Positions 6,885 to 61,733 of a stretch of DNA of 64,000 bases are shown here, piece by piece. Source of the stretch: Dicyema japonicum. Taxonomy: Eukaryota > Animalia > Dicyemida. Each line of letters opens with the position of its first letter. The stretch's first letter is position 1. The notes below the pieces were generated by a model. It searched no databases. It worked only from the letters and a program-made list of their open reading frames with translations, and was not told the DNA's origin. The stretch is taken from the NCBI GenBank assembly GCA_011109175.1, contig RDEW01000026.1, positions 214,761 to 278,760 of the forward strand. Direction: 5' to 3'. The translations under genes were made by a program, and so were the position numbers.

Positions 6885-7080
6885 TTAGTTAAGTAACCCC
6901 AGCCTCACTAACTTGTAAGTGGCCAGCAGCTATTAAGTAGGACGCAGAGGATTTATTAAATCACTGAAGATGCTTGGTTTCAGGTAATCTTCCAATGTCA
7001 GTGCTCTAAAGGTGTATGCAGGTTGCAATTATCGAGAGCCACATTTTGAGTTTTTTTAGATTTGAATGGGAAACACTGCT
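6885..7080 (-). mobile_element. Vingi-like family A 3' end
   Basis: TAACCCCAGCCTCACTAACTTGTAAGTGGCCAGCAGCTATT is nearly identical to 36505-36560. Confidence 0.65.
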
Positions 7081-19103: not shown

Positions 19104-22100
19104 TTATTTAGTAGAGCAGAGAAGAGCAGTGCCTCTGAAAATCCAGTGATAATTTGGTTCCAAACTCTTCAACCGAATTGAGGCAATAAAATTAATTCCA
19201 GATCTTTGGGGATTTTTGTAAATTGGGCAAACATAAAAACTCTCTTTTATAGCATTAATACTGCTAACTGCGAAAAGACGAATAACAGGCATATCCTCGT
19301 AAATAATCTACAAATATTTATTATAAAAACCTTAAATTTAGATTCTTTAAGACGACAGCGTTTCCTATCCCATCCAGCACCTTCAAGAAACAATCCATGA
19401 ATATACACGCCCTCCGACGCCTTCTCAGAGACTTCGTCTTTGAAAAAGTGCATGACTTGATTGTGCAAGACAGCACAGTCCAAATTCCACCCTTTATGGT
19501 CCCTCACAGATTCCTACACTCAACTGAATTCTAACCTGTAGTACAGCTGTTAGAAATCCCTGAGGATTAAAAAACCCAGGAAGCCAAAAAGATATTGGTC
19601 TGCCATTGTTAAGCCAATCAGAGTACTGTGAACTTCTTTTGACCAATTCATTAATCCATAGAGCAAGTGAATGAGTGACCCAAGAAAACTAAATTGATTG
19701 ATGTAATTAACTTTAATCCATATTTTGGAAACTCGTAAATTATAAATATTATTGAAAGTCTCTTTAAGTTCGTCATTCATCACTATTGTTCCATTAATGG
19801 CCAAAATTAAGTTATCCACAGTTTGCTTGATCAAATTGACTAGTCTTTCCATTCGTTCTAGTTCCTGTCTTAAAAATATAATCATTGGTTGGCCAATCCC
19901 GAATTCATGAAGACGTTGATTTACCTAAAATTTATTACCCACTAACTTCGCCGTAGACGGGTAGAATGGAAAGAATCTCTTTACAAAATCTGAGGACAAA
20001 TGCCTCCTTCGACTCACTACTGTACACATTAGTGTCACTAGGCATCACGTTTACAATACTGGAGAGGCAATACTCAGCAGCATTTCGACAGTATCTATTT
20101 TAATGTTCAACAATACGTTATTTCAGCATTATTGTCAAGTCCAAAAACATGAGGGGAGTCATTGTCAGCAAATTCATTAATTTTTGTCAAAATCTCAATT
20201 TTATTACGGTCTTTAGGATATTGGTAATTGTTAATGTTATAATTTGGACGGAAAATGTGATCACCAAAGTATTTGCTGCAAAATGATATCAAAAGTCTCT
20301 TATCAAAGTCATCAGTCACCCGTCCCCCATACATAATTTCCCCAATCATATAGTGGATGCAGTTCCAAGAAATACCCTACAAAATAAGTTATTTGTAACC
20401 CTTTTGGGATCCACATCGTCCAAATAATTAAAAATAAACTGGACACTGCTGTTAAAGTCGGAGGCATTGAATTCATACGGAACATTCCAACCCAATGGAC
20501 CAAACTTCCTCCTCTCCTGCAGAATACTGTGCATGAAGGCTGTCGTAAATATGAGAGGAGTCCACTGAGTGGACGGCATTGATTCAAAAAAGTCTTCATT
20601 GATCGAATGATAGGTTCTCTTCAAGCCAGCTCGAATACCACACGGAGGTTCAGAAGTGTATTTAAGAGAAATCCGTCTAAAACAATAAATATTACTTGGA
20701 GGAAGTTAATAGGGAATTTATCATGATATTCCGTGGTTATCCAAAGACGGAAATCACTGTGAATATAGTGGGATGGATTTATCAAAATTTGGAGAATAGT
20801 TTCCAAAAAGTCAAAATCCAAGTGGCAATTTTGAAGCAAAACCCAGTTTCCATTAAGCATTGCAGATTGTAATTTCTTAATGGCTATGGTTTGTTGTCCC
20901 TGCCCCATACTAACGGAGGACAAATCTGTTTTATTACAAAATAAGCACCTGTCTCATATTTCTTGGACAGAATATCGATAGATTCAGTAGGGTCAGACCC
21001 AATGGCCAGTATTCCTAACAGCGGGATACGTGACGTTGATTCTTTTAACATTTCTTCAAAGTTGAGGACATTCCCCTCCACATATTTGTCTCCCATGCTG
21101 AATGAGACAAAATCTTTGGCACAGGAAAGCATTCGTTCGGGGAGAAAACATCGAATAAGCAATAATTGTTGGAATTTACTAAGAAATTCAGAGTAACCGT
21201 TTGGAAGTGGTTGTGTTTCAGGAGAATTGTGATCATACCACAATTTCCAGGTTTTCTCGTTATCCTTAATAACATTTATAATTCCTGTGAATTTTTGAAG
21301 TTTGGACAATGACAATAAATTGAGCCAAATGTGATCCTGAATCCAACTAAACTTGTTAGGTTCAACAGATCTTAAATCTAGAGAATCCCCACCTACAAAT
21401 AATTACAAGAGAACCTTTAAGGAAGGTAATATATTCCTCTTTACGAATATCTTTAGCTTTCAAGCCAATTTTCATTACTAATAAAAGAATAAACGTGAAT
21501 TTGTCCTTTTCGAGATATCCCCTAACAGCATGGGTGAAGACGTTATATGTCAAGGTATCTATTATAGTCTGCACTCTTTTAGCCGTTAAAATTTCCTTGG
21601 GAGTCCTAAGTAGATAGAAATTGACTACTTTGTTATGGAACTGACAAAAAGGTTCATAAACTGATCAAGGGATATTGCATACATGCAGTTCACCTGGGAC
21701 ATTTCAAATATTGTAAAGTAAAGAATTGCCCCTCGAATTGCCACATGTCTGTATTCCTCCTCAATATTGTAGATTTTGATTTGAGTTTCTTCAGAGACTT
21801 CTAGTTGGTGACTAACAGTGATCTCTGTCTGTTTAGTTTCCTGGAGTACTTGTAGTAATGTTTTATCCTCTACCAGAGATCCCTTATAACTGTTTAGCAT
21901 AAATACCTTTATACTAATTAATCTTGATAGAAGATTATCCTCGAGTTGTTTTATTAGTAATTTATTATTCATTACTTGATGAACTAACGATATTCTTTCT
22001 TTTTCCAACTCCTCCTGTTCATAGTGAATCACTGACTTGAGCAATTGTTCTTCCAAACCTGATTCAGTAACAGTCATGTCGACTATTGAGGTTTTACTGC

Positions 22101-25100
22101 TTATTTGTGCTTTAAAATTAGGATTTGACAGTTTAGATATCAAATACAGACGAAACCCAGGCATTACGTCAACTTCCTTATCACCAACCTTCACCTATTC
22201 AAATTCAGAATTTACACTACCTTATACATACTCCCTAGTCTCACAAAATTTTTTCCAAAATATTATCCAAAATAGGATCAATCTCTTCTTCAACGTTTTC
22301 TATGATCAATGGATGCCCAAAACTCAACGATTCTTCCACTTTCATACGAAAATTTTTATCGTTAAAAGTTGTTTTAATAAATTCATTGTTTTCTTCCATA
22401 TTCTGATAATACAAAATCATACTTTAATCCACCTATGTCCCTGGTCTTGGGGATCAATCAACAAAGGATAACGTAAAGACTTTACAACTATAAGTCCATT
22501 CGAAATTGACAAATTATCACTTGGAAGTCCCTTTAGATTCCAATCTAGAACCTATGAACTCACACAAGTGACTACAGTTGTTGGCAAAACAAGTTTTTCA
22601 ACAATATCCAAGGATAACTCGAGTGGAATTTGATTATTACAAATTTGCGTTATCCAAATATTTTTGAGATAACTTCTAAAGTCATGATTGAATGGTCCAC
22701 AGTAGAAGTAAATGCACTACAGAGAGTAATGTCCCCAATAAGTCTATTTTATTTTATAACCAAACTTTTCAATTTCATCTTCAAAATCCTTTATCTGTTG
22801 AGTCCAACGACCTTTTTCGCCTTCCAGTCCATTAATGAGAATTTGAGCAGTGTTCATTTTATTTCTGCAGTCATTAGCCTCATTAATTAGTCTCTAAACT
22901 ATGAAATAATGATTACTGACCATCTTCTCCCCAACTGCTCTATCATACATTTCTCTAACCACTGCAAGTTCATGTTCCTTCTCGTCCAATTGAGATTGTG
23001 CAGTAGTCAGGTCTTTATTAGCCAATTCCAATCGAGCTTCTTGAATTACTAAATTTTCCTATTATTGGTAATCATTTAATACTTTCAAAGGAAGCACCTC
23101 TTTGTTTATTACGTAAAAATAACACATTGCCTTCGTCCATGACAAAAGTCCGGCCACGTTTCCACACACTTTTCTCGCATTAGTGATGTTATAGTCCTCC
23201 ATTCTCATGTAAGGCTCTAAAAGTTCCACAATTTCATCATTTATTATATCCTTGGCAAAGTTCTGCAGCATTTGAAGTAATGATCCTGCTGACATGAACT
23301 GTACACTATATGACAATTTACCTTCAGGGACTCACTCCATGACAGATTTATGAATTTTTTCTCAGAATTATAGACCACCTGGTTTAATTTCATACGAAAG
23401 AGAATTAAGACACAGTCCATTATTCTCATTATCAAATGTGGAGGTTTTGGAAGTTTTCTGACGGTGGCAATATCTTGAATTTATGGAAAATATAAACCGC
23501 TAGGTTTTATAGTGTTTAAAGCAGCTTCGGCTTCTTCTAATGCAGGCTTTGCTTCTAAAAGCCTCTCTTCTGCTATCTTTCTGTCTTTATCAATACTATC
23601 CACAATATTCTGGGCTTTGTCTTTCACTTTCTGAACTTGAGTCTTGACAACTTCAGCCAATGAAGCTTTTTCTTTAACTTCAATTAAAACCTAAAATTAA
23701 AACAACGATACGTTTTCAGCCTTTTCAGACGCTACAACTAATTCTGCCTCCATTACTTCCAATTCCTTACTTAGAACTTCGATTGCAGATGATGCTTCCA
23801 CTAACTTTTTAATTCCGTCGCTCATTTTTGTTTTTTCGTTTGTGACTTCCCAGAGTTTATCCTTGTACGTTTCTTTAAACAACGTCAAAAAAGAAAAATA
23901 TGATTTTGGAGTCACATGCACTACACGACGAAATCTACATTTTAATAAATTTTAACTTTTTAAAGTATTCTTGTGAACCCTCGACCACCGATTCGTGAAT
24001 AGTACCCATAAGTGAGACCAAATTCTGGAAAGTTTTATTGGAACAGTTTAATTCTTTAAAATCCTTCAAATAACGATTGGCGACAGAAAGCAAGGCATTC
24101 TTGGGCCAACTGTGAAACCAAACAACAGTACATCCGGATATGAGACCGGAGAATCTTAAAGATCTAACTCTCAGAGTGTCCCCAGCCTAATTTGATATCC
24201 AAATTAAAATACAGGAGAAAAGCATAATGCTACATGCAAATTCTTTCTTACTCTGTGCATAAAGTATTCACGAAGGCTATTAAGGGTAGGTACTCTCTTA
24301 GGGAACTCCTTCCTCATTATGTGGGTCAGGTTACTGTTTATTTCTACAACTTCTTCAGATGTGAATAAATCGGAAATCTAAAATTGATAAATTGAAATAT
24401 TTACAGTTCCACAAGATAACATGTTGTTTATTGGCTCTAGAAAAGTCTCGTCTTTAATATCTGTTTCAGAAAAAATGAAAGTGATGCCTCTCCCATCCAA
24501 GCCTGCAACCAGGTAGAGTACTTTCAAGTCTTCCATGAGGTCAGTTAAACCATAAGATCTTAAGTAAAAGGAAAACAGAACCTGGATAGGGAGATTTGAT
24601 AAGTTTTATAACCTGCTATAAACGATGCCAATTTGGTTAAAGACTTTCGCCCAGATCCATCAATTCCGACAAGGAGAATGTGTCCTCTCTCTAGTCTCAT
24701 TATTCTTGATATTTTTATTATATTAGTTATGGCTTCATCAAAGAAAACCAAGTCAAGGCCGGATCCACGAATTGTCTCATTATAACTACACATTTGTATT
24801 TCAAGGTTCTCCCTGAGAATGTTAATATCATAAATCTTAAATTACAGGAATAAATACAGGAATATATGGCAAACATAACTCAGAATCAAGGTCATCATTT
24901 CCCTCATATTCAGAACTAATGTAGAAATAAGAGGATAACTTGATAAAATTAGCAAAATAGACATCATCTACAAGTTTTAGGTCTCCAAACTCGCTGGCAA
25001 TTGCTGATGTCAAAAGATTAGAAAACCATTTGCATTCATCCTTGTTGATAAATCTGTTTTAATATTTTCTATTACCTGTCTGCAAACACTCTCATACATT

Positions 25101-28100
25101 CATGTCTCCACAAAAGTAGTAGATTTTCCTTATTTGTTACAACGTCTGGGGTGGAACAGGTCAATCCTTGCCAAATCCTCGACAAATCACGGAGGTTGAA
25201 CACATAGTGGAATTTAGCAGGGGAAGGAAGCATTTTATTCTAAATTTGAAATCCTCGGATGTACTTTGAGTGATTCCCATACATTTCTAGTCATCACAAT
25301 GACTTTATCGATTGAAGTGAGAATATCCTTAGAAAATTTCCGCCCTTCAGTAAAGTAGGTATTTGCTATCGTTTTAAAAATTTTGTCTATAGACATCTCC
25401 GTTGGTAAACATGCATTAAAGATACAAAACTGTCGTTTCAACCTCTCAGGGATATCATTTCGACCTCCTCCAGGAGAGATCATTGAACATATAAACTATA
25501 TAACAAAATCACCATACCTGAATATCTACAATATTGCAAAATATTCCAGGCTTATCTAAACTGTAGAAGCCACCTGTTTCCATGAGCTGCCGTGTGAGTT
25601 CATTTGTGACTTGATCCCCCCATTCATTAATTGAAGGCATATTGATATCATCTATGAAAAAAGTCATCTTCTTTCCACTGGGAGGGCCATATGTAGTTCC
25701 TACGCGTTTATCGACGTTTGTTTCGATCACTCTCTAAAGTTAAGTTCAAAATTGACAACTTGGAATATTTGAGGCGTTGTATAGTATGAAAAGTTAACTG
25801 TGGTCACAAAATGACTCTCTGGGTCGTGCTTGCTCAAATATGAGTTAATTGTGACTGTTTTGGCTGTTCCTTGGTCCCCAGTTAAGAGAACTCCCTTGCC
25901 TTGAATAGCTATTAGTCCAATCAAATATTCCATTCTAACACTGTCCAGATTGGGAACAAGTATTGAGTTATATTCATTAAAATCAGTCGTCAAAACAATT
26001 TTATTTTCCACAATATTTTCAAAATGCTTCCATTCACACATTTCATTAATAAAATATTCAAAAATTGACGAATCAGACAAATCTAATGTAGGCAAGTCCA
26101 AAGATTTGTAATAATTTTTCATAATAAATTGACTGAGTTTATTTCTGTCCTCGTTATTCAAAAGACTCCCAAAACTCCAAATGATTGAAAAAGTGCATAA
26201 TCGTTTAAATGTCCAGGAAGAGTACATTTTAGTATCCTGTCGAATAAGCAATCCATCAAAGATATCACAAGCCTAAATATTCATGAAAATGACCTGTCGG
26301 AGAATGAAAGACTCGTAAATTGGGATTTTCAAGTGTAGTTGTTTATTCGTATATTCAAAAATTCCATGAAAGCAATCATTAAAACAATCTGCAATAACCT
26401 TATTTTCTATCAAAGTGTTTTTACCAAGCCAACTCTTAAATTTATAATAAATTAAAACCTGAAATTGGGGTTCCCAACCAAGACCTAATGAACTAAAGTA
26501 AACAATTCCATTTCTTGAAACGGTCGCTGGTGAAGCATTATCAATGTTGTGGACTTCAAAAATTAACTTACAATTCGGAGACATTGGAATTCTATCACCA
26601 TTTGCCAATGTTAGTGTCTTGTTGTCATCCAAAACAGAATTAAGGTTCTCGATCCACAACGAATCAACGGGACCATCCAGAATAATCCAAAGATATTCGC
26701 CTTTTTTAATATTGCTAGCTTTTCTCCACAAAGTTGAAAAAATTCCATCAGTCCAGTCATTAGTTGATACATTCAGTTTTCCAAACATCTGAGATGATGT
26801 TATGGCTTTTGGGTTCATTTTATAGTCTCTATAAATATTTCCATTTGTCGACAAAGCCTTCATTAGGACTTCAATACAACTACTCTTTCCTGTTCCACTC
26901 GACCCCAAAGTAATGATCCCATGCCTCACCATTTGAGTCTCATTAAGCTGAGGATAAGACAATTTAAAACCTGAAATATTTTGTTGACCCAAGGTTGGTG
27001 GTAAATATATTTATTATTCGTAATTACCTCTCTGATAGAATTATTTAGGTAAATGTTTTCATTTTCTTCCAGAGTTAACGAAGGGAATAGTCCTGTGATT
27101 AAAGATTTAAAAAGAGGTTCATCAGCATCCACCAATTTGGACAAATTCATATCAACCAATCCTTTCATAACTACAATTTCCTCAGCCTTATCTGGGTTAG
27201 ATCTCTTTGAAGTACCCAAAGTCCGCAGAACTGAAAGCATATTTCTCAACCCAAAATCATAATGGACCTGCATTATTAAGAGACTACTTGTTTAGACAAC
27301 AACTCTTCACATAGTTTGTAAAGAGTGAAAAACTTTCGTGCAAGGTCTATGTTATGGATGAATCCAATTGAGGCCAACTTAACCCGAATTATTATTTGTC
27401 TGTCGGGAATCATCATGGAAATTGTTCGAAATTAATTTTTAGATTTTCTGGGAGTTCCTGTCGACCAGCGTAACCGGGATTCTATAAATAATCAAAATCA
27501 TAAACCATCGTCAAGAAAATTCCAAATTCGTAGTTAAAATTGACAACATCTCCATCTGTGAATATTAACATTTTTTTCCTTTTCTTTTTAAAGTTGAGAA
27601 CCACAGATATTTGTTGGGCAGCCACAGACAACACAGAAAGCTCAATTCTGTTAAACTCATCAAAACAGCCCCAAGTGCCTGACATGGCCAAACCTATAAA
27701 CTATAAAACTAAGTTTAAAAACCTTTAAATATCCTCCCAAGTCCAATATAGTCCATCTGATCAGAACAATTGAACACAACAACGTATTTTCCAATGCAAT
27801 GCCCCATATCTTTGGTTGTTTCAGTTTTCCCAGTTCCAGCAGGTCCAGCGGGGGCAGCACCCATTGAAAGTCTAATTGCCTGTGCGATCGTAATATAACA
27901 TCTTTAATAAAAGAAATCAGAACCTGTCCGTAAGTGGAGTTACTACAAGACGTTCAGTACACCCAAGATATTCATTTTGATAAGTAAAGTTAACATCAGT
28001 TATGGAAATGGAGCATGTCTTTGTGTTGCTATCAAAATAAAAACGAGTCTGTTTAGTCCATTCAAAATCACTAATAGACCTTACATTAGCACGACACTAA

Positions 28101-35449: not shown

Positions 35450-36500
35450 GTACATTTGAATGTAAGAATCCAAAAGTCGAAAAAATTCGTTATATTTTAC
35501 CTGTGGAAAAAACTGCGATTTTTTTGCAGAGTGAAATTACTTCAGAAGGTAATTGGTAAGAGTTCGACTCCTACCAAGCTAAGGTGATACTTTGTTCAAT
35601 AAATTCGGAGCGAACATGTATAGTTTGGATGGATCAGCTTTTGCTCTGAAATTAATCAGAGTCGGAAGATCATATTCATAATGTTCAGCACAATACTTCA
35701 AGGCAAGGTCAATCTCAGCAGTTGAAAGAGATCTCCCAAACGTGTTGGGTCAATTAGATTCGCAAGTAAGTGGAAAGATGTTAATGCTTGATGCACTCGA
35801 GTTTTCACTTTATCTAAAATAGCTGTACATTCATAGTCAATATAAGTCTGTTCAAGTTCTTTCCAAATTGCAGAGGCTACAGCAACAGATTGAAGATACT
35901 CCGTGGTGTGGCTATATCCAGAGGTGTCCACAGTGTCAATTAGATAGTTTTCTCCGTCCGATGTTACAACTGACACACAAATAACAGGTTCATTATGAAT
36001 GTTACTCCACCCGTCCAACATCATAGACACTGTCTTGTCCTGGAGTCTTTGCCGACAGTCTTCATGTATTTGGTCGTACACACGATCGAGCAATGGACCA
36101 CCAATTTGATGACGAGAGGGTAAACGATACCCAGGAAGAAGCATTTGGACGAATTTGACAAATTCCGGATGTTCTACAGCTGCAAAAAGAGTGTTACTGG
36201 AATATATGTATCTAGCGAGTTGCACATCAATCAATTTTTTTTCGATGACGTCGTCGTAACGCAATTGATTAAAAACTGGTCCCTCATCCTTGGGAGGAAT
36301 TCGCTGATCAAATCAGGTTTCGACGGATTTTCTAGAATATCAATATTAGTTCAACATAACAAATGATGCTACCTCATCCGAGATACGAGACCTTGTACCT
36401 CCTTCCCGCAATTACGGCATCTGGCTCGACTCCCGGTCTTTCCAGGAATAATACGTTTATCGAAGTGAATCCACAAGGCATCACGCTTTCTTCCAGACAT
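35450..36500 (-). pseudogene. hAT transposase, decayed
   Basis: Begins MSGRKRDALWIHF...ARCRNCGKEV (BED finger), then FAAVEHPEF...LPSRHQIGG...SMMLDGWSN. Stops and a deletion are present. Confidence 0.85.
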
Positions 36501-36502
36501 TA

Positions 36503-39500
36503 GTTAGTTAACCCCAGCTTCACTAACTTGTAGGAGGCCAGCAGCTATTATGTAGGGCGCAGCAGATGTTGGTCGCTCCCATAGATCGGTCAGTTCCGGC
36601 ATTGTGGAGAAATGTTGTGCCAATTCATGACATTGAAATAGGTGATTTGTTGTCAGCACGTGGAGGTTGCAAAAGGGGCAGAGTACATCATATGTTGGTA
36701 GATATGGGTGGTAGACGAGCCAGGTTTACTCGCACGTCCCTTGAAAGAGAGGATTCTGATTGGTATATTCAAAAAGAGGGTCGCTGTAATATTTTATTGT
36801 CTCTCGAGGGATGTTCTAGACTGTAGGCTTGGAAGAGGAACTGCAGGGTTCTCATTTCCAGATGGTCTCAAATTGAAATAATCTTTGACTCCCAATGTAG
36901 ATAATCGACAGGAGTTGATCTGAAACATCCAGTAATTATCCTGAGCGCAATGTTTTGTACTTTTTGTAGTTTGTCAATAGAAGTAAGAAAGGCAGAGATT
37001 GACCAGCAAGGGCATCCATCGTTAATAGTTGTTCGAATGATTTGTTTATGATGGTTAAGGTTTCTTTGCTTTGGCCAAAGGAATGGCCTGACACAGCTTT
37101 AAATATGTTGATCTTGTGAGAAGTCTTTTTACATTGTTCCTCCACATGTTTAGAGAAAGTTAGTAGTTGGTCATAAATAACTCCAAGTATTTTGGGATGT
37201 TTCGTAACGGTGAGTGGTTAAAATTGGTTAAAAATTTAGTTGGCGGCGGTTGGGCGTGAATACAGTGACGGTGGATTTCGATGGAGAGGGGGATAGGTGG
37301 TTTGTTCCAAGCCACTCTTTAAGAGTGTTCAAATGGATCTAAACATCCTTCGTTGCTTCGTTGACGTCTGTCTTTAGAGGCAGCAATCATGTCATCCGCA
37401 TACAATAAGAGAAGTGTCTTGGAATTGATTGGAGGTGTAAGTTGAATAAGGTGGGTGATAAAACGGAGCCTTGGGGAACTCCATTTGGAAAGAGTCTGTA
37501 ATGAGAAAGACATGACATAATTTCAGCCCACCAATTCTTCCAGAGAGGAAATTTGTTAACCAATTCTGAAGACATGGAGATATTCCAAATACAAGAATTT
37601 TGTTACTTAGCACGCACCTTGATGTTCGATCGAACGCCTTGGTTAGGTTGATCGATGCGAGGATAGTCCGTTTGGGAGAATTATAATTGTTAAAAACATC
37701 AGCGATATATTGAGTTAGGGTAGAGAGATGTGTTAATTTTGAGTATTGTGGACGAAAGCCATGTTGAAAATCAGGGAAGGAAAGATTTTATTTATTTTAA
37801 TAACCCCGGGAACACTGAGAGAGAAAGACAAAAGAGTCAAACAGTTAGGTGATCCCAGTCCTCGCAATCAATTGTGCCATTCGGCGTCTGTGATCTTCCA
37901 TCGTCCCCACTACTTTCCGGAAGAGCCTTCTCTCGGTCTTGCAGAGGAATCCGATCGGGGAGGGGAATTTCTTATCCAATCGGTTTTCTCTTGCCGTGGA
38001 AAATTTCCATCTTCCTCACAGACGCGAAGAAATCCGGAGCCACGACTACGGATCTTATCTTCCATGAGTAGTGGGTCGACTGTTGATCCATTACGTGGGC
38101 AAAGCATACTGATTGTTTTCCGGTGTATCGAGTTGATTCTTTGGACCATAGACTCCGATAGCGAGAATCTCCATGCAACGGAGGCATACTCAACGGCAGA
38201 TATTAGTTTCAATACAACACGTTCAACAATTTTCGATACTACAGATAGTAGTTAAATTAATCTGAAAAATCCCGGATCCGAAGGATCTTTCTTGGGCTTC
38301 AGGATTGGATTATTTTGTATTTTTTCCATAGTGCAGGAATTCTCCAGGTGTTGATGGACACAGAAATTATGTCTGTTATTGCTTTGAATCCTTGCATTCC
38401 CAGTTGCTTTAAATAAGATTCCATCAAGCCCTTTGACAGGAAAGTTTTTGGCGTTTTTATGAGTTTTTCGACATTCGACGTACTGATTTCAATCGGTTTT
38501 CCTTGAGGAGTTAACGTTTTTCAATTTGCATGGACGAGAGCATTTGTTCATATCTATGTGATCACTTTTGCGTAGTGGTCCATTATGACATCTGCCTGAT
38601 GAGTGAAATCACGTGGTGTTTTATTCTTGTCAATACTGGTGGCGTGGGTTGTCTCCATTCTATTTTGTTTCGACTGAATTTCACGTAAAGTGCCCCAAAA
38701 TTCCTTTAGTTTTGTTCGGTGGTTAATTTTTGTGATGAAATTGTTCCAACGGTCCAATTTCCTCTTGTTGATTAATTCTGTAATTTCGCTATGAAGGTTG
38801 GATAGTTCGGCAGTATAAATTCTTGATTTTTTGAGTCGACGTCTTGTATGAATCTTTTCGATAATTTCCTTAGTGAAATTGGGATTATAGTCTGCAATGA
38901 GTCCTCTTGGAATGTATTTCTTGTCGGCACTGAGGATGACTTAATTAAAAAATTTCATTGCGGCGTCAAGCGATTTGAAATTCTCAACGGAAAAGTCGGA
39001 TAGAAATTTTTCTGTTTCTTCTCTGAATGAATCCCATTTTGCACGTTTGTAATTTGTTATAGTTTTCCGATGCCTAACAATAGGCGAGAGTAGTTCGATT
39101 GACAGTAAAATTGGATTATGCTCCGATTGTAGGTAATGTACAATTCTCCAAGATATCTTCGAAGATATTGATGGTTAACAAAATGTGAGGTCAGGTGATG
39201 TATCGAAGTGTCCAGGTCTGGAAGCTGTTCTATCTGATTTTCTGTCATTGAGGATAACTTATTGTTCTAGTTGAGAGAGGACCTGAAACCCCCTCTCATT
39301 ACTCTTTTGGCCGATTAGCCAGAGAGGATCTTTTGCATTTAAGTCTCCGCAGATTATCACATTTTCAATCTTTACCAATTCGGTTAGTTTTGGGTAGTAA
39401 TGTTTCATACTTGGTGGCGGGATGTAAATAATTACAAATGTATACCTTGTGCGGTTTATTTTCACCAAGACAGAAGTATGCTCGATGTGATCGTCATCTT

Positions 39501-40004
39501 CAAACAGAGCTTGTGTCTGAGCGGAAGTATCGGAGAATGGAATAGATTTGTGTATGAGTATGAGAACACCGCCTCCTCTGTTTGAATTCGGTCGATCACG
39601 GCGGACAATTGAGTAGTCTTTGTAGTGTGGAAGCGTTGACTCTCTTGATAGTTTCGTTTCCTGTAGCATGGCATTATCAATTTTGTGGGAGGTTAAAAAT
39701 GCAAAAAGTTCTTTAATTTGTGTGTAAAACCGTTTATGTTGAATTGCATGATATTGAGGAATTTCCCGTTCTTATAGGGCCCGGAGTTCTGTTCAATGTC
39801 CCCAGCAAAAAGTAGCCAATCCGATCTTTGGGAGCGAAAGCTACGCGCCCGCTCAATAGCCGCCATCATCCAGTCCGACTTCCCAGAGGTCGTTGAAAAG
39901 GTTGACAAAGGAATAATTGTGGTTCTTTTAGTTGCCAGATTGATGTTGCCAGATTGATACTGGTATCCAATTTTCTCGACGTGAAGGTGAACCACATCGA
40001 AAAT
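36503..40004 (-). mobile_element. Full-length decayed Vingi-like LINE (family A): 5' ribozyme, 2A-like motif, APE, RT, CCHC finger, no RNase H
   Basis: 12-bp TSD TTCCAGACATTA at 36491-36502 and 40005-40016. Motifs GDIEQNSGP, LQETKL, GDLNAK, GVPQGSVLSP, YADD and CPFC...HLFQC. Confidence 0.88.
37790..38205 (-). mobile_element. 5'-truncated Vingi-like family B 3' end nested inside family A
   Basis: Interrupts the family A RT between VVLKLI and KSFLPDFQHGFRP. It ends in the GGGATCAC...CCCGGGGTTATTAAAATAAA 3' signature. Confidence 0.72.
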
Positions 40005-40005
40005 T
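39919..40005 (-). ncRNA. Putative HDV-like self-cleaving ribozyme at the LINE 5' end
   Basis: Nested pseudoknot pairings: P1 AATTTTC/GAAAATT, P2 GTGGTTC/GAACCAC, L3 TTCACGT, J1/4 GG, P4 CCAG/CTGG, J4/2 CTAA. P3 is imperfect. Confidence 0.65.
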
Positions 40006-40194
40006 TCCAGACATTAAAAAATTTAAATGATTTTTTTGATTTTTTTAATGATTTAAATCATTGATTTTTTTTGTTGATTAAAATCAAATGATTTAAATCT
40101 AACAATCCTGATAGTGAAGCATCCCAGAAGGTTATCAAAATAATTTCTTACATTATGACGTCATCAACTTTTTAATTGCTATAATTCATTATAT

Positions 40195-40869: not shown

Positions 40870-41385
40870 GGCTGCACCCGCTCTTGTGCAAAAGGAGTGC
40901 GGGCAGAGCACCCCGCCATGTTGCTATGAACAACATTGTCATGCGAGTTCTTGGCAGTACTGGAGCCTGTGGGATTGGACCGCGGATATGGGAAAAGACT
41001 GGATGGATTAACTATCCTTCCGTTCACTGAGGGAAAATCGGTCGTATGGGACTGCACTGTTCTTTCTCGAACTCGATGATACTCAGCTCGGCGCAGTCCG
41101 CTGGATTGACAGCCGATCTGGCCGAGAAAATCAAGATTAAAAAATATAGCGAAGTTGGAGACCGCTACCGTAGTGTACCGGTAGCAATCGAGACGTCTGG
41201 TGCGGCCGGAAGTATTACAGCCTCTTTCCTAAAGGAAATCTGAGGAAAATTGGCCCACCGCAGGAAAGACGTGCGGGAAGCGGACTGGCTGAGGCAACGA
41301 ATTGATATCGCAGTTGTCCGCGGAAACGCTTACTCCGTGATGTCAGCAGCCGCTCTCCCTCATAGTTAATAAATTATTATTATTA
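40870..41385 (+). mobile_element. CRE-clade 3' fragment (subfamily B)
   Basis: [32 protein letters not shown]...PVAIETSGAAGS, followed by a (TAT)n tail. Confidence 0.82.
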
Positions 41386-42380
41386 TTAAAAACCAAAAAT
41401 CACAGACAAATTAATTAACTACATAGCCGTCAGGTGATTCCGGCCGCCTCGAGTAGCCATCTCATTCTTGCTCGGTGTTCTCCCGGGTTCCAACGCATTT
41501 CCGGATTGGGCGGGGTTTCTAATTTTTTGGAGGGTAGTAAAGCTCCGGTTTTCCCACTAATTCCTCAAAAGGTGTAGGGTTTAGAAGTGTCTAAGAAAAC
41601 CTATTGCAAAGCCTTACTGGCCATTTTTTGGAAGATATTGATTTTTTTATATTCCTGTTTGATAGGTTGGTTCCCCATGCCGCACACCCGTAAGTTAGAG
41701 ACGGTTGAATATACTGCACGTAGAGCGAGTCCAAATTTGAGTTGAAACACCCATTATATTGTCCAAGGAGTGTTTTAACAAAATTTAGCATTCGTTGTGC
41801 CGAAAAGATGACGTTGTCGATGTATTTGCTGAAGGTCAAGAGTGGGTCGTAAGTTACGCCCAGTATCTTGACCGAGTTGGTCGTGGGGATTGAGTTTCCA
41901 TTTATGGTTACACATGGAGCGGAGTTTGTCAATCTTCTGTTTGTTGTGAAAATTGTTGTGTAAGACTTTTCGGGACTTGTATGAAGAATGTTCTTAACGA
42001 GCCAACAGTTCAGATCGTCCAATGAAGTTTGTATCCAGTAAACAGCAGTATTAACGTACAGATCTTTGACTGTGACGATTATATCATCCGCATATGTCAG
42101 AACCAGAGTATCGTCACTGGTAAGGGAGGGCATATCATTTAGGAATAGGTTGAACATGTGTGGTGACAGTGGAGATCCTTGAGGGACCCCATTTGGAAGG
42201 AACTTGGTCACTGATCTAGTTTTTCCAGCAGTCACTCTTCCTCTTCTTCCATTTAGGAAATTAGCGATCCAGATTTTCAGGTTGTTTGGAATTTTTGACG
42301 TAAAGATCTTACTTGTCAAAAGCTTTCTTGGGACAGTATCAAAAGCCTTTTCTATATAGATGGAGCATAACAAAGACTAA
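41385..42380 (-). mobile_element. Vingi-like family C, 5'-truncated, RT frame largely open
   Basis: ORF 41591-42373 with IEKAFDTVPR, GVPQGSPLSP, YADD and KILGVTYD. A sibling lies at 54778-56075. Confidence 0.88.
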
Positions 42381-42699: not shown

Positions 42700-43384
42700 G
42701 AAACTAACAACATAGTCATTTTCCTCCACTTGCCTGTCATATCAAGCTCCTAGTACATCCATAACCTCTACTTCACTTAGACGTTTCCCAATCTTTTGGA
42801 GGTTCCCGCTGAGGACCATCGGGAGAGTGTTCCATGGTCTTCATTGAATCAGGAAGCATCAGAAGCGAAAAAGTTTTTAGTGGATACATTAGGTCTATTC
42901 TCAGAATATTTTCAAAAAGCCTCCTTCTAAATTTGTGATTTTGATCAACTTGTATAGTTAGGTCAATCGATGCAATGATATAAGTTGGAGAGGATTGGAG
43001 TTATTGAACCTATCAGCGATATACTGAGTTAGGGTAGAGGTCCGTTTATGTTAAGGACGAAGATCATGTGTGAATCTGAAAAAAGCAGATACTCGGGTAT
43101 TAATTTAAATACAACACGTTCAACAATTTTGAACACTACTAACAAAATCGACGGAAGGATCCGGATGGTCTTTTTGGGGCTTTAGGATTATTTATGTTAA
43201 TGTCCCAGCGAGGCTTAGGAGTTGCTAATCCGATCCTTGGGAAAAATGCTTTGCGCCATCATCCAGTCCGACATTCTGAGGTCTTTGAACAGGTTGACAT
43301 GGGAGTAATTGAGGTTCTTTTAGTTGCCAGATTGAAACTGGAATCCAACTTTCTCCACGTGAAGGTGAACCACATATAAAATTA
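42700..43384 (-). mobile_element. Internally deleted Vingi family A derivative retaining the 5' ribozyme (43311-43384)
   Basis: The 5' ~200 nt align with 39790-40005. The sequence then jumps from GDI to the RT N-terminus (KPQKDHPDP...SKIVERVVF). Confidence 0.72.
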
Positions 43385-43387
43385 ACA

Positions 43388-46165
43388 TTATTATTATTAC
43401 CTCCAGGATCACTGGGTCAAAGAAAAGAAATAAAAGGTTCTCAACTAACTAAGTGATCCCAGACCCACAAGGGAGAGGACGAGTAGGTGGGGTCGAGAAT
43501 CTGAACAGCTTTTCTCATTGACATGGCATCGGCTCAAAATTTATGCATGATTGTAGATATTTCGAGTGTATGGAATAGAGGGCACCTCGGTAAAATAGCC
43601 TCCTTTAAGAATTTCCGTTGTAATTCGATTAATATATTTTTAATAGGCTGGATTTTGTGTTCTGGTCCAATTATCCTTATTGCGGTCTCCTCGATTGCGG
43701 ATAGTTTCAATGAGGAGGATCGTGAAATTACCCATAAAAGACTTGCAAACGTCATCGTGGGTCGGATAAATTCTTCATAAATCGTGGCAAGGCCACCAGT
43801 TTGCTCTCTAAGTGTTTTGAGAGCATTTTTTTAAATTCTCATTTTCCTTAGAGCAGAAGTTATTATGTTCTCAACATGTCGGATAAAGTGAGTCTCTGAT
43901 CAAAGGTGACTCTCAGAATCTTCGGTGTTTTGTTAATAGGAATAGCCTCGTTCTTCATAAAGAATTTTGGTTCGACACAGAGCTGTCTTTTGTAAGTGGT
44001 AAACAACGTGACAGAGGACTTTGTTGCTGATGCGTCGAGTCTCCGCTTCGAGAGCCATAGTTCCAGCTTGTCAAGCATTTGTTGAGCGGACTGAGTAGCT
44101 GATTAAATCTTCTACCCTTGGAGGCAAGAATGATATCGTCGGCATAGGAGAGGATTAGGCAGTTTTCATTACAGGTTTGTGGCATGTCGTTTATGTAGAG
44201 ATTGTAAAGGGCTGGAGATAGTAGGGATCTTTGAAAGACTCCATTTGGTATGAGACGGGATTTTGACTTTATGTTATTGCAAATCACTTGTCCACGTCTC
44301 CCACTTAAGAAGTAGGCAATCCATAGTTTTATGTTTGGGTGGATGCATGTATCGTAAATTTTCTCAGTAAGGAGTTTTCTTGAGACTGTGTCGAAAGCCT
44401 TTGTTATATCAACAGAGACCAAGACTGTTCGTTGGTGTGGTTTAGTGGAATTGAATCCCTCCGCAATGAACTGGCACAGGGACGTTAGGTATGTTGATGT
44501 GGAGTGTTTAGCCCGGAATCCATGTTGGAAAGGAGAGAGTGGGATGCAATCTTTGATATTTTCAAGAACTAATCTCTCGAGTGTTCGGGAAGTGAACATA
44601 GGATTGAGATTGTTTTGTAAAAAGAGGGTCATTTTCGGATTTTCCTGGCTTCAAGATCGGTTTGATGTATGATCTCTTCCAGACATCCGGAACAGTGTTC
44701 ATATTTATTGATATGTGTGTATATGTAAGCAATTAAATCTAAAGCAAGAGGTCCTAGGTGATTTAGTTCTGTTGTAGAAATATTGACTGGACCTCGGGCT
44801 TTGGAGTATCGGGCCTTTGATATTGTTCACGGATTTCTTTCGCCGTAAATATGGTCAACACGTATGATCCTTTCGGTTTTATTCTGTTTAAGAGTACTAG
44901 GTCTTCTTTGTAGTGGTTTTTATGTGCTATGGAAGCATAGTATTTCATTAATGTGTTTGGTTGTATTGATATCCCATTTTGCGGTTCATCAAAAGACCTT
45001 TTGATAGACTTGATTTTGTTTTAGACCTTCTGTAATGACGGATTTTCTGTTAGGATTTTTGATAGTTCTGTCCAGCGTTTCTCATTTGTTTTACTGATAT
45101 ATTTGTTAATCTCCTTGTTTAGTGTACGAATTCTTATTACATCCTCCTTCGACGGTATGTTCTTTTTCTTTAGTTTTTTTCTTTGACTAAATGTTGGCTG
45201 TTGAATTAAATCGCCTGTTTGTCTTTCCATTGGAATAAATAATTTTTAGCTTCTTGAATGAACGAAGAGAACTGCTTTATAATATTGTTTAGTGATGAGG
45301 CAGCATGTAGTTTTGATAACTTGATCTGCATGTCAATATAGAAAATCGTGTCAGTCAGCAAGGTTATATCAAAGTAGTGACCTTCTGATCTTGTTTTTAT
45401 TTGTAAAATGATCGGATTATGATCATTCATAGTTTCGTATTTCACTCTCCATGAAATTAAAGAAGCCAGAAGGGGAGACGCGATTGAAACGTCAGGGGAT
45501 GATGGTTTATCATTTTGTCTTGAGGGGGTTCTTGTGCGAAAGTTAGGGTCGTTAGGATGCAAAAGGTTCCCAAGTCTTCTGTTAGCATGTCTCACCGTCT
45601 GTTTGACGTCTGACCTCTCAACCAGAGCGGGTGTTTTGTATTTAGGTAACCGCAAATAAGAACGTTTATTAGTGAGCTGATGGACGAAAGTTTTGGGCAA
45701 GTGGCTGATGATGAAGGAGGTAGATATGAATTGATCAGAGTAAGACGTAACCTTGGGAGTTGGATTTATTTGACCAGAATTTCGATACTTTCATGGTTTT
45801 GGAGGCGGTTGTAGACGTATTTGGTGATATCTTCATAAGGGATCCCGTTTCGTATGATAGCTAGTAAGCCTCCCCCAAGTTTTCCAAATCTATCTTTGCG
45901 GATAACTGAGTATCTAGGAAAAATTAGAGTTGTGTTCACAATTCGATATTTTTCCATAAGTACGATAATCTTACATTTGATCCAGTTTATATTTATTTGC
46001 ATGATCTTTAGGGGTCCGAGGTTCGATTCGACGTCCCCACACAAAGACAGTCCGTCCTTGTCAGTCCATCCGTGTAGGATAGGCAGTGTAACTCTTTTCT
46101 TTAAAATGTCTCCAGTTTGGTTAGTTACACATTCAACCAATCGTAAACGTAAAGGTAATACTTTT
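43388..46165 (-). mobile_element. Full-length decayed Vingi-like LINE with 2A-like motif
   Basis: 11-bp TSD TAAAATTAACA at 43377-43387 and 46166-46176, and an (AAT)n tail. Motifs CGDVESNLGP, RKDRFGKLGGGLL, FQHGFRAKHST and YADD. Confidence 0.85.
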
Positions 46166-49984: not shown

Positions 49985-50590
49985 AAGGGATTTATTTATT
50001 AGAACCCCGGGATCACCGAGAAAAACAGAAAAAAAATCAGACAGTTAAGTAATCCCAGTTCCCACAATCAAACAAGACATCCAACGTCTGTGGTCTCCCA
50101 TTATTCCCGCTACTTTGCGAAAGAGCCTTCTCTCTTCCCTGCAGAGGAATCAGATTGGAGAAAAGAACTTTCTAACCGATCGATTTTCTTTTGCCTTGGA
50201 AAAAGACAGGCTAAGCGGGTTTCCGCCCTCCTTACAGACTGAAGGAATCCGGTTCCGCGACTACAGGTAGTGGGTTAACTGTTGATCAAAAGTGAGGGCC
50301 CTCAGATATAGTTTTCCGGAATATTGAATTGATTATGTGGAGCGTAGTCTCTGATAACGCGAATCTCCATGCAACATAGGCATACTCCACAGCCTGGGAA
50401 TTTCCGGACTAGCGCGCGTATAATATTCAACTTCAGTCCTTTGGCGAGGACTGTCCCATCATGTAAGTTAAAGTTCAATAGCCTGTGAACAATAGCCCAA
50501 GAATTGAAGGAAACCTTGTCACCGGTATCTGGACAAGACAAATAAAAATTCTTGGATCCTCTTTTGAACGACGATCTAAAGTTAAAAGTG
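49985..50590 (-). mobile_element. Vingi-like family B 3' fragment
   Basis: Aligns with 37800-38200 and carries the same 3' signature. Confidence 0.75.
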
Positions 50591-54775: not shown

Positions 54776-54777
54776 AA

Positions 54778-56075
54778 TTAAAAACCAAAAATCACCGACA
54801 AATAAAATAACTACACAGCCGTCAGGTGATTCCGGCCGCCTCGAATAGCCATCTCATTCTTACTCAGTGATCCTCCCAGGTTCCAACGCATTTCCGGATT
54901 GGGCGTGGGTCTCTGACTTTTTTGGGGGTAGTAAGGCTCCAGTTTTCCTCACTAATTCCTCAAATAGTGTAGGGTTTAGTGTTGTCTGGGAAATCCTTTG
55001 CAGAGCCTTATTGGCCATTTTTTGGAATGTATTAATTTTTTCCATATTCGCGTTTGATAGTTTGGTTCCCCATGGAGCACACCCATAAGTTAGAACGGTT
55101 AAATATACTGCACGCAGAGCGAGTCTAATTTTGATTTAAAACACTCATTAAATTGTCCAAGGAGTGTTTTAACAAAATTTAGTTTCCGTTGTGCCGAGGA
55201 GATGACGTTGTCGATGTGTTTGCTGAAGTGAGTCTTATATTACGCCCAGTATCTTGACCGAGTTGGTCGTGGGGATTGAGTCTCCATTTATGGCTACACA
55301 TGGAGCGGAGTTTGTCACTCTTCTGTTTGCTGTGAAAATTGTTGTATAAGACTTTTCGGGACTTGTATGTAGAATGTTCTTAACGAGCCAACAGTTCAGA
55401 TCGTCCAATGAAGCTTGTAGCCGGTATACAGAAGTATGAAAGTACTGGTCTTTGACTGCGACGATTATATCATCCGCATATGTCAGAACCAGAGTATCGT
55501 CACTGGTAAGGGAGGGCATATCATTTAAGAATAGGTTAAACATGTGTGGTGACAGTGGAGATCCTTGAGGAAAGAAACTTGGTCACTGACCTAGTTTTTC
55601 CAGCAGTCACTTTTCCTCTTCTTCCATTTAGGAAATTAGCAATCCAGACTTTCAGGTTGTTTGAGATTTTTGACGTAAAGATCTTCCTTATCAAAAGCTT
55701 TCTTGGGACAGTGTCGAAAGCTTTTTCTATATCGATGGAGCATATCAATGACTTCTGATGAAGTTTGAGTTTTAGGCCATCATTGATGAAATTTGTAAGT
55801 CATGTAAAATGCGTTACTGTGAATTGCCCTTTTCTGCATCCGTGTTAAAAAGGTGCATCAGGAAAGTATGGTTTGATTAGTTCAAGAATCAGCTTTTCCA
55901 AGATTTTTGATGTAACACATAAAAGAGATATTGGTCTGTATGTGGCTGGTGATCACTTTGGTCGCCCGGGTTTCAAAATTGGTCGTATGTTTGATAGCTT
56001 CCATATGGAAGAAATGCAATTTTCGTTGATGGAAAAGTTGAAAATTTTGGTGAGTGATTGCATGGAGGCCTAACT
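54778..56075 (-). mobile_element. Vingi-like family C, 5'-truncated
   Basis: Highly similar to 41385-42380 and extends further 5' (KPGRPK..PATYRPISL). Confidence 0.86.
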
Positions 56076-59460: not shown

Positions 59461-59705
59461 GCAGTGAATGCTGTTACATGTGGTCACCACCCCTCTACCA
59501 ACGTACGATGTCCTCTGTCACTTTTGCAACCTCTTCGTGTTGACAACAAATTACCTATTTGATTGGCATGAATTAGGACAACGTTCGTTTACAATGCCGG
59601 GACTGACAGATCTATGGGAGCGACCGTCATTTGCTGCGCCCTATTTAATATCAGCGGACTTCCTACAAGTTAGTGAGGCAGGGGTTACTTAACTGGCTAA
59701 CTAAC
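59460..59705 (+). mobile_element. Vingi family A 3' end
   Basis: LCHFCNL...DLWERP and a CTACAAGTTAGTGA tail, as at 36503-36720. An inverted LINE scrap follows at ~59705-59885. Confidence 0.75.
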
Positions 59706-59913
59706 ATGTTACTCAAACAAAAACACTTAAGAACAAACTGGAAATATGAAAAATTTATCCGACCCACAATGACGTATGCAAATTCTTCGTGGGCAATGAA
59801 GATTTCACGCTCTTCGTCTTTGAAACTATTCGCAATCCAGGGGACTGATGTAAAGTTGATTTGACCAGAATACAAGGTCCATTGAAAATCTTTTAATTGA
59901 ATAATAATAACAA

Positions 59914-61651: not shown

Positions 61652-61733
61652 GCCAACATGGCCGAGCGGTCTAAGGCGGCAGCTTAAGGTGCTGTTATCT
61701 TCGGATGCGTGGGTTCGAATCCCACTGTTGGTA
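61652..61733 (+). tRNA. tRNA-Leu-AAG: tRNA-Leu (anticodon AAG)
   Basis: Full cloverleaf: acceptor GCCAACA/TGTTGGT, anticodon arm GCAGC-TTAAGGT-GCTGT, long variable arm and T-arm GTGGG-TTCGAAT-CCCAC. Confidence 0.95.

What the first reader, a model, noticed from the sequence alone, without database searches (positions are those of the whole stretch)
39919..40005. HDV-like ribozyme fold forms the exact 5' end of a TSD-bounded Vingi-like LINE, with a second copy at 43311-43384
Seen in sequence: on the minus strand, directly after the TSD, the sequence reads AATTTTC-GAT-GTGGTTC-ACC-TTCACGT-CGA-GAAAATT-GG-ATA-CCAG..CTGG-CAA-CTAAAA-GAACCAC. This gives a 7-bp P1, a 7-bp P2, L3 = UUCACGU (fits the UYCNCGY pattern), a J1/4 GG, a P4 hairpin and a J4/2 beginning with the would-be catalytic C. 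Copy 2 keeps the same layout (L3 identical, then GGA-GAAAGTT-GG, P2 6/7). Established: HDV-like ribozymes head R2, RTE and trypanosome L1Tc/ingi elements, and the CACC-TTCACGT-GG core closely resembles the L1Tc Pr77 core. Inference: this Vingi lineage processes its 5' end with a ribozyme. P3 is imperfect (ACC opposite GGA or CGA), so these two copies may be inactive.
Basis: partly seen in the sequence, partly recalled or inferred. Interest (0 to 1): 0.8.

Follow-up and report, generated by a model that had tools for sequence, protein, structure and literature searches.

The report
Ribozyme-like head of a squid-type LINE
The first ~75 bases of a dead jumping gene (a Vingi-like LINE in a cephalopod-like genome) have the layout of a hepatitis-delta-type self-cutting RNA. 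The layout is the same as in the proven trypanosome L1Tc ribozyme, so this is a plausible new member of a known kind, not a new kind of thing.

Summary
On the minus strand a 3,505-nt APE+RT LINE (36501-40005) is flanked by a 9-nt target-site duplication, ATGTCTGGA. Its first base is the first base of a 7-bp P1. P1 interleaves with a 7-bp P2 around a 13-nt P3-L3-P3' block (ACC-TTCACGT-CGA). A second, internally deleted copy starts at the same base (43383).

The spacing, 7-3-7-3-7-3-7-2, equals that of the experimentally active L1Tc ribozyme (Pr77), and 11 of 14 bases in the core are identical. Related LINEs that carry a 2A peptide, taken from metagenomes, have canonical HDV-like folds with this geometry upstream of their APE domain. 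An Octopus sinensis relative shares the block ATGTGGTTCACCTT.

The ancestral ORF starts at element base 9, inside the fold. It runs through a decayed 2A-like motif into the endonuclease, as in L1Tc.

Weak points:
- P3 is 2/3 pairs in copy 2 and 1/3 in copy 1.
- J4/2 is long (9 nt).
- Rfam finds nothing, but it also misses the canonical relatives.
- A model built from relatives scores only about 7 bits.
- The octopus L3 lacks the key G.

Both copies are dead. Catalysis and the Vingi label are inferred, not shown.

Verdict: new member of a known kind, of moderate interest.

The parts
39919..40005 (-). Copy 1 HDV-like module (87 nt, or 73 nt without one duplicated unit). Segments: P1 40005-39999; J1/2 39998-39996; P2 39995-39989; P3 39988-39986; L3 39985-39979; P3' 39978-39976; P1' 39975-39969; J1/4 39968-39967; P4 39963-39960 with 39952-39949; J4/2 39948-39926; P2' 39925-39919.
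43311..43383 (-). Copy 2 HDV-like module with the same layout: P1 6/7 (one wobble, one terminal mismatch), P2 6/7, P3 2/3. It heads an internally deleted copy.
40006..40014 (-). 5' copy of the target-site duplication ATGTCTGGA. The boundary is ambiguous by one A.
36492..36500 (-). 3' copy of the TSD. It is also the ATG start of the interrupted hAT/BED-DUF659 transposase remnant.
36501..40005 (-). Full-length but decayed LINE (3,505 nt). APE lies at about 39760-39259 and RT (YADD) at about 37575-37319. A CCHC-like motif sits near 36700. The tail TAACTAACTA is at 36510-36501.
39995..39997 (-). ATG at element nt 9-11 (J1/2-P2 junction), the start of the ancestral ORF 'MWFTF...'. It is in frame with the 2A-like motif and APE once one 14-nt duplicated unit is discounted.
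   Evidence: octopus homologues begin MWFTF
39931..39958 (-). Exact 14-nt tandem duplication (ATCAATCTGGCAAC x2). It lengthens P4/J4/2 and shifts the reading frame.
39777..39800 (-). Decayed 2A/StopGo-like motif D-I-E-Q-N-S-G-P (S in place of P), directly before the APE start.
   Evidence: canonical motifs in relatives
59486..59706 (+). 5'-truncated 3' end of the same LINE family, with the tail TAACTGGCTAACTAAC followed by flank ATGTTAC. This shows the same ATGT-type target.

Best explanation
The module is a decayed copy of an HDV-like (L1TcRz/Pr77-type) self-cleaving ribozyme that heads a Vingi-like, single-ORF APE+RT LINE.

Proposed mechanism in the active master element:
1. The LINE is transcribed, possibly as part of a longer host or read-through transcript.
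2. The first ~75 nt fold into the nested double pseudoknot (P1, P1.1, P2, P3, P4).
3. The cytosine at the start of J4/2 catalyses cleavage immediately 5' of P1 base 1.
4. This gives the RNA a precise 5' end while the whole ribozyme stays on the RNA, so every full-length new copy inherits it.
5. The ORF starts inside the fold, at AUG nt 9-11. A 2A/StopGo motif about 60-70 codons later releases the leader peptide encoded by the ribozyme from the APE-RT protein.

Shown: the sequence layout; the TSD-defined 5' end coinciding with P1 base 1 in copy 1, with copy 2's similarity starting at the same base; geometry identical to the proven L1Tc ribozyme; canonical folds in relatives; and ORF continuity.

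Inferred: cleavage, co-transcript processing and 2A function. The two copies in this window are dead and probably non-catalytic.
For: (1) The TSD fixes the 5' end at 40005, which is P1 base 1. Copy 2's similarity to copy 1 begins at the same base.

(2) The chance of a 7/7 P1 plus 7/7 P2 in HDV topology is about 2e-5 per fixed position.

(3) The Pr77 77-mer printed in PMC1874656 has the same 7-3-7-3-7-3-7-2 segment lengths. It matches 11 of 14 bases over nt 17-30. L1TcRz cleaves at +1 in vitro, Mg2+-dependently.

(4) Canonical HDV-like folds of the same geometry lie upstream of the 2A/APE region, on the coding strand, in L009, L010, L013, L014, L029 and L061. The scan gave 5-8 hits against 0-2 in reverse-complement and downstream controls.
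- L009 encodes the second-best APE match to the window element (44% identity). Its core is ACC-TTCACGC-GGT.
- These loci have strong P4 hairpins (z = -2.3 to -5.7 in five of the six; L029 -1.3) and J4/2 = C-[A/G]-A-A. The descriptor required neither feature.
- All 10 P1/P3 pairs covary in a five-sequence alignment. Four of those five sequences were selected for pairing.

(5) Octopus sinensis copies share ATGTGGTTCACCTT and CTAAAA(A)GAACCA. They have a perfect P3 (ACC/GGT) and different P1' and P4 sequences that can still pair.

(6) Comparison with these outgroups suggests G28, C7 and an intact P2' in the master element. That gives P1 7/7, P2 7/7 and P3 2/3.

(7) The long ORF starts inside the ribozyme in L014 (nt 12, 753 aa) and L061 (nt 66, 936 aa), as in the window element (nt 9).
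Against: - P3 is never perfect here. A18 opposite A30 occurs in both copies, and the same ACC...GGA occurs in a third LINE in the window. Copy 1 also has C28.
- J4/2 is 9 nt, against 5-7 nt in the relatives.
- P4 is weak: 4 bp, z about -1.
- In copy 1 a 12-bp alternative hairpin is the predicted minimum-energy fold.
- No Rfam HDV-family hit at E<=10. Rfam also misses the canonical relatives, so this carries little weight.
- A covariance model built only from relatives aligns end to end at exactly 40005-39967 and 43383-43345. It scores only 7.2-7.7 bits: E about 0.05-0.07 locally, and not among the window-wide matches at E<=10.
- The octopus family is young (copies about 99% identical) and has L3 = TTTTCT, without the G shown to matter in R2 ribozymes. 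Its 5' end does not coincide cleanly with the homologous P1.
- A precise 5' end can also come from an internal promoter, as Pr77 itself shows.
Confidence: 0.7

Rival explanations
1. The module is a structured 5' element with a non-catalytic job: an internal promoter, a translation-start platform, or a binding site for the element's own protein. Its HDV-like shape would then be a vestige of a ribozyme ancestor, and transcription initiation would set the precise 5' end.
For: - Pr77 in L1Tc is both a promoter and a ribozyme.
- The recently active octopus family keeps the block but lacks the L3 G and has an ambiguous P1.
- P3 carries A opposite A in all three window versions.
- The P2 strands and the AUG are conserved in sequence between octopus and window, which fits coding or protein-binding constraint.
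- The model built from relatives scores the module weakly.
Against: The complete HDV geometry, L3 with U at position 1 and C-G at positions 5-6, the P1.1 partners (C23 with G38), and C-A-A at the start of J4/2 are all retained. A promoter or binding site has no need for them. Close relatives have canonical folds. An active R2 ribozyme with a P3 mismatch is on record.
Confidence: 0.2
2. Chance resemblance: AT-rich complementary heptamers that happen to sit at a LINE 5' end.
For: Perfect P1+P2 pairs in this topology arise about 2.4 times per 128 kb in shuffles, and several occur in low-complexity parts of the real window. Loose descriptors give many hits.
Against: The position is fixed independently by the TSD. 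The 13-nt core and all segment lengths match L1Tc. The block is conserved in octopus. The 18-nt core occurs only at the two element heads.
Confidence: 0.04

Closest known systems
L1TcRz / Pr77 of Trypanosoma cruzi L1Tc (Ingi clade)
   Same: - Occupies element nt 1 onward.
- Identical segment lengths: P1 7, J1/2 3, P2-side 7, P3 3, L3 7, P3' 3, P1' 7.
- P3 5' strand is ACC in both.
- L3 is T-N-N-A-C-G-T in both.
- Followed by a leader peptide, a 2A motif and then APE within a single ORF.
   Different: - L1Tc has P3' GGT (3 bp); the window element has GGA or CGA.
- The P1 and P2 sequences are unrelated.
- L1Tc encodes RNase H; this group does not.
- L1Tc activity is proven; activity here is untested.
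- The host is a cephalopod-like animal, not a trypanosome.
R2 / R4 / RTE / LOA LINE 5' HDV-like ribozymes
   Same: Same fold class and same logic: cleavage at or near the element's 5' end, with the ribozyme retained in the RNA. Ruminski et al. 2011 link them to translation initiation; only that paper's title was seen, in the reference list. P4 and J1/4 are variable, and a P3 mismatch is tolerated in one active R2.
   Different: Different LINE clades. R2 is a site-specific rDNA element that is co-transcribed with 28S rRNA. No 2A cassette is described for those elements in the papers read here.
CPEB3 and HDV ribozymes
   Same: Double-pseudoknot topology, and a catalytic C at the first position of J4/2. 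From my memory only, the CPEB3 L3 is also UUCACGU. I could not verify this here.
   Different: Those are viral or intronic, not LINE heads. Their J4/2 is short (C-G-A-A).
Vingi / metazoan Ingi LINEs (Kojima et al. 2011; Ingi-1_AC of Aplysia)
   Same: Single ORF of about 1,000 aa with APE+RT, a 3-3.5 kb element, and a microsatellite-like tail. Ingi-1_AC has an active N-terminal 2A.
   Different: [quoted passage not shown] Odon et al. found no 2A in Vingi. Clade assignment by RT phylogeny was not done here.

Membership tests
HDV-like self-cleaving ribozymes | Nested double-pseudoknot order P1-J1/2-P2-P3-L3-P3'-P1'-J1/4-P4-J4/2-P2', with P1 of about 7 bp and P2 of at least 5 bp | tested here: met
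   Copy 1 has P1 7/7 and P2 7/7. Copy 2 has 6/7 and 6/7. The segment lengths equal those of L1Tc.
HDV-like self-cleaving ribozymes | 3-bp P3 closing L3 | tested here: not met
   ACC/GGA gives 2 of 3 pairs in copy 2, and ACC/CGA gives 1 of 3 in copy 1. Relatives have 3 of 3. One active R2 ribozyme has a P3 mismatch.
HDV-like self-cleaving ribozymes | L3 of 7-8 nt with conserved U at position 1 and C-G near the 3' side, plus P1.1 between L3 and J1/4 | tested here: met
   L3 is TTCACGT in both copies. C23 with G38 and U22 with G39 can form P1.1. Compare L1Tc TCAACGT and L009 TTCACGC.
HDV-like self-cleaving ribozymes | Catalytic cytosine at the first position of J4/2 | tested here: inconclusive
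   A C (39948) directly follows P4 and begins C-A-A, as in the relatives' C-[A/G]-A-A. However, J4/2 is 9 nt, and a second C (39945, or its duplicate 39931, in the CTAAAA block shared with octopus and L1Tc) is an alternative candidate.
HDV-like self-cleaving ribozymes | Cleavage immediately 5' of P1, so the product starts at P1 base 1 | tested here: met
   This is indirect evidence only. The TSD places the element's first base at P1 base 1, and copy 2's similarity begins at the same base.
HDV-like self-cleaving ribozymes | Mg2+-dependent self-scission, abolished by C-to-U at the catalytic site | not testable with these tools
   This needs an in vitro transcription and cleavage assay.
HDV-like self-cleaving ribozymes | Match to curated or relative-derived covariance models | tested here: inconclusive
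   Rfam gives no hit at E<=10, but it also gives none for the canonical relatives. Model R1, built from 5 relatives, scores 7.2 and 7.7 bits, gapless, at the exact 5' ends. Local E is about 0.05-0.07, and neither copy appears among the window-wide matches at E<=10.
Vingi clade of non-LTR retrotransposons | Single ORF with APE and RT, no RNase H, about 1,000 aa | tested here: met
   APE and RT pieces were found in the window element. The six intact full-length relatives show APE+RT only, at 1,033-1,111 aa (one also has a PHD finger). The element is 3,505 nt.
Vingi clade of non-LTR retrotransposons | RT-domain phylogeny placing it with Vingi reference elements | not testable with these tools
   No Repbase reference sequences were available. 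The only hint is a mite homologue that its source names 'Tcoingi protein-like'.
2A / StopGo recoding peptides | C-terminal motif D-(V/I)-E-x-N-P-G-P | tested here: not met
   Copy 1 has DIEQNSGP, copy 2 has DININNPKAP and a third LINE has DVESNLGP. All three are decayed. Relatives carry canonical motifs at the same place.

The most novel reading that the evidence does not exclude
The ribozyme, leader and 2A form one ancient cassette shared by trypanosomatid Ingi/L1Tc elements and metazoan Vingi-like LINEs. In it the self-cleaving RNA is itself translated: the start codon sits in J1/2-P2, and 2A discards the peptide that the ribozyme sequence happens to encode. On this reading the cephalopod lineages show the cassette evolving under joint RNA-fold and coding constraint. 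That would include a tolerated A-A pair in P3 and, in octopus, an L3 without the canonical G that may either still cleave or have switched to promoter-only use.
Probability: 0.35. Interest if true: 0.65.

Novelty: new member of a known kind. Interest (0 to 1): 0.5.

Why it matters
HDV-like ribozymes are accepted 5'-end processors for R2, R4, RTE, LOA and trypanosome Ingi/L1Tc elements. In the literature I could search, Vingi is not on that list.

A Pr77-type ribozyme followed by a 2A motif in animal Vingi-like LINEs would imply that the whole 5' cassette predates the split between the trypanosome and animal lineages. It would explain how these single-ORF LINEs get uniform 5' ends. It would also offer a natural case of a ribozyme lying inside a reading frame.

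There is a practical side. Vingi-1 5' UTRs are being retained in gene-writing constructs, so knowing whether that region self-cleaves is useful.

The two copies in this window are only fossils.

Tried and rejected
- **Rfam.** Gathering and E<=10 searches of both copies gave no HDV-family hit. A control on six canonical relatives also gave nothing, so Rfam is uninformative here.
- **Word-index protein searches.** The 136-aa APE ORF and the octopus leader found nothing new.
- **Exact DNA patterns.** The core in viral contigs gave 4 chance matches in unrelated GC-rich genes. A two-block pattern in JGI metagenomes gave 0 matches.
- **Loose HDV descriptors.** They proved far too permissive, with hundreds of hits, and were replaced by stricter ones with controls.
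- **TSDs for the four octopus copies.** None found, so their 5' end is defined only by where the copies stop matching.
- **L011 and L012** (upstream of P0081 and P0100). No convincing fold or shared block.
- **MAFFT alignment** of the window, octopus and third-LINE heads misaligned them. I compared them by hand and by script instead.
- **CPEB3 L3 check.** A literature search for UUCACGU to verify my memory of the CPEB3 L3 was useless.
- **Pol III A/B-box reading** of GGTTCACC. Considered and dropped: it is only a partial B-box match, and there is no tRNA or SINE context.

Full report
**What is there.**
- P1: AATTTTC (40005-39999) is perfectly complementary to GAAAATT (39975-39969).
- P2: GTGGTTC (39995-39989) is perfectly complementary to GAACCAC (39925-39919).
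- The two helices interleave, as in a hepatitis-delta-type double pseudoknot.
- Between P2 and P1' lie exactly 13 nt, ACC-TTCACGT-CGA. After them come GG, a 4-bp hairpin (CCAG/CTGG), and a single-stranded stretch that begins with C.
- Copy 2 (43383-43311) has the same layout, with one mismatch each in P1 and P2 and with ACC...GGA for P3.
- Copy 1 also holds an exact 14-nt tandem duplication within P4/J4/2.

**The element and its ends.**
- The module heads a 3,505-nt LINE (36501-40005). It has endonuclease and reverse-transcriptase pieces broken by stops and frameshifts and a tail TAACTAACTA.
- ATGTCTGGA flanks it on both sides, at 40014-40006 and 36500-36492. The 3' copy is the start codon of a hAT/BED transposase remnant, so this sequence is target DNA. 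The element therefore begins at A40005, give or take one A.
- Similarity between copies 1 and 2 starts at that same base.
- Two further 3' fragments of the family lie at 59486-59706 and 6884-6947. One of them shows another ATGT-type target.

**Chance.** Across the window, a perfect 7+7 bp P1/P2 pair in this topology is not rare: about 2.4 registers per 128 kb in dinucleotide shuffles. At the single position that the TSD fixes independently, the expectation is about 2e-5. The 18-nt core occurs only at the two element heads, against 0.05 expected.

**Comparison with the proven ribozyme.** The 77-nt Pr77 sequence of T. cruzi L1Tc is printed in PMC1874656.
- It reads CCCTGGC-TCA-GCCGGCC-ACC-TCAACGT-GGT-GCCAGGG-TC. 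These are the same segment lengths as the window element for nt 1-39.
- The P3 5' strand is ACC in both, and 11 of 14 bases over nt 17-30 are identical.
- L1TcRz cleaves at +1 in vitro, Mg2+-dependently, and still works without the P2 3' strand.
- L1Tc also has a short leader peptide and a 2A motif ahead of its endonuclease.

**Relatives.**
- A full-library search with the 136-aa endonuclease ORF found relatives at up to 46% identity. Many have (L)LLxAGD(V/I)ExNPGP just before the endonuclease.
- Four Octopus sinensis proteins begin MWFTF, which is ATGTGGTTCACCTT, the same block as in the window.
- Their loci (L005-L008) are about 99% identical 2.9-kb copies. Each head reads TTTAGCGCGCGTC-ATG-TGGTTC-ACC-TTTTCT-GGT-GGCGCC-GG, then a 5-bp hairpin, then C-TAAAAA-GAACCAT.
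- In octopus P3 is perfect, and the P1' and P4 sequences differ from the window yet can still pair. However, L3 lacks the G, three P1 registers are possible, and I found no TSDs.
- The window's host is cephalopod-like: a two-domain small heat-shock protein at 1062-1898 is 60% identical to an O. sinensis protein.

**Broader clade.**
- An alignment-based scan of JGI metagenomes returned 75 loci.
- A descriptor was applied upstream of the endonuclease. It required P1 and P2 with at most one mismatch, a full P3, and L3 of the form T-N3-C-G-N.
- It found folds of the same geometry on the coding strand in L009, L010, L013, L014, L029 and L061. That is 5-8 hits, depending on threshold, against 0-2 in reverse-complement and downstream controls. 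All six loci encode 2A motifs.
- L009 encodes the second-best endonuclease match to the window element. Its core is ACC-TTCACGC-GGT.
- Features the descriptor did not demand are also present. P4 hairpins begin 0-2 nt after P1' and are strong in five of the six (z = -2.3 to -5.7; L029 -1.3). J4/2 reads C-A-A-A-U, C-A-A-U-G, C-G-A-A-A-U or C-A-A-A-C.
- In a gapless five-sequence alignment that includes L1Tc, 98% of P1/P3 cells pair and all ten pairs show compensatory changes. Four of the five sequences were chosen for pairing, so this shows consistency. It is not an independent test.

**The ORF starts inside the fold.**
- Discounting one unit of the 14-nt duplication, the ATG at element nt 9-11 opens MWFTFTSRKL... 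It runs through ...LLFAGDIEQNSGP into the endonuclease.
- In L014 an ATG at ribozyme nt 12 opens a 753-aa ORF, with NPGP at residue 83. In L061 an ATG at nt 66 opens a 936-aa ORF.
- This matches the L1Tc arrangement. It suggests that 2A frees the enzyme from a leader peptide whose sequence is dictated by RNA structure. That last point is inference.

**What weakens the case.**
- P3 has A18 opposite A30 in both copies. A third, different LINE head in the window (about 46150-46075) also reads ACC...GGA. Copy 1 additionally has C28, whereas copy 2, octopus, L1Tc and the third LINE all have G. By that comparison the master element had P1 7/7, P2 7/7 and P3 2/3.
- An active R2 ribozyme with a P3 mismatch is on record, so 2/3 is not disqualifying.
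- J4/2 is 9 nt and P4 is weak.
- Copy 1's predicted minimum-energy fold is a competing 12-bp hairpin.
- Rfam finds nothing, but it also finds nothing in the canonical relatives.
- A covariance model built only from relatives aligns gaplessly at exactly 40005-39967 and 43383-43345. It scores only 7.2-7.7 bits, which is suggestive locally and not significant window-wide.

**Conclusion.**
- The module is best read as a fossil of an L1TcRz-type HDV-like ribozyme that defined the 5' end of a Vingi-like LINE. Confidence is about 0.7 for descent and for function in the master element.
- The copies present here are most likely inactive.
- The main rival is a structured 5' module that now serves only as a promoter or translation platform. 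The octopus data keep this rival alive.
[quoted passage not shown] It also reports no 2A in Vingi.
- I file this as a new member of a known kind.

Noticed in passing
window 46150-46012 (minus strand): The head of a third, different LINE, with a near-canonical 2A-like motif (DVESNLGP at 46035-46012) directly before an APE start. Upstream, ATG-GTGTAAC ... AAAAGA-GTTACAC mirrors the P2 layout of the main element with three compensatory pair changes. There is no room for a normal L3, and TTGGTT/AACCAA forms a simple H-type pseudoknot instead. Metagenome locus L016 shows a similar P1/P2 pseudoknot without P3/L3 (CCTCTAG-GGTGCCTGC-CTAGAGG...GCAGGCACC).
   Followed up: partly
window 39777-39800; 43200-43170; L005 about 3150-3173: 2A/StopGo-like motifs sit about 60-70 codons into the ORF in this LINE group. 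They are decayed in the window and canonical (GDVEQNPGP) in Octopus sinensis and in many metagenome relatives. Odon et al. 2013 reported finding none in Vingi.
   Followed up: partly
window 35698-36500 (minus strand): A hAT-type transposase remnant (BED-finger-like start MSGRKRDALW..., DUF659 domain) was hit by the LINE exactly at its start codon.
   Followed up: partly
window 39969-40003 (minus strand): In copy 1 the differences from copy 2 (CG at nt 7-8, C at nt 28) together create a 12-bp hairpin (nt 3-14 with 22-33). This hairpin is the predicted minimum-energy fold and competes with the HDV-like fold.
   Followed up: partly
window 59486-59706 (+), 6884-6947 (-), 40006-40014, 43384-43390: The insertion sites of this family share (TA)ATGT next to the (TAAC)n-like tail. 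Copy 2 sits just after an (AAT)n run. This suggests a target preference, or microhomology with the tail.
   Followed up: no
window 41385-42378, 43955-44632, 54777-55753, 49991-50393, 63130-63999: Several other LINE reverse-transcriptase remnants from at least two further families. One (63130-63999) is 74% identical at the DNA level over 896 nt to a LINE in Octopus sinensis locus L006.
   Followed up: no
window 1062-1898 (-), 21625-26992 (-), 61652-61733 (+): Host genes: a two-domain HSP20 small heat-shock protein (60% identical to an O. sinensis protein), dynein heavy-chain exons, and a tRNA gene.
   Followed up: partly
L009 137-246, L013 17-96, L014 99-181, L061 269-340, L029 232-354, L010 212-286: Canonical-looking HDV-like ribozymes at the heads of 2A-bearing LINEs in environmental metagenomes. 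None is detected by any Rfam 15 family at E<=1, so these look like a family that current models do not cover.
   Followed up: partly
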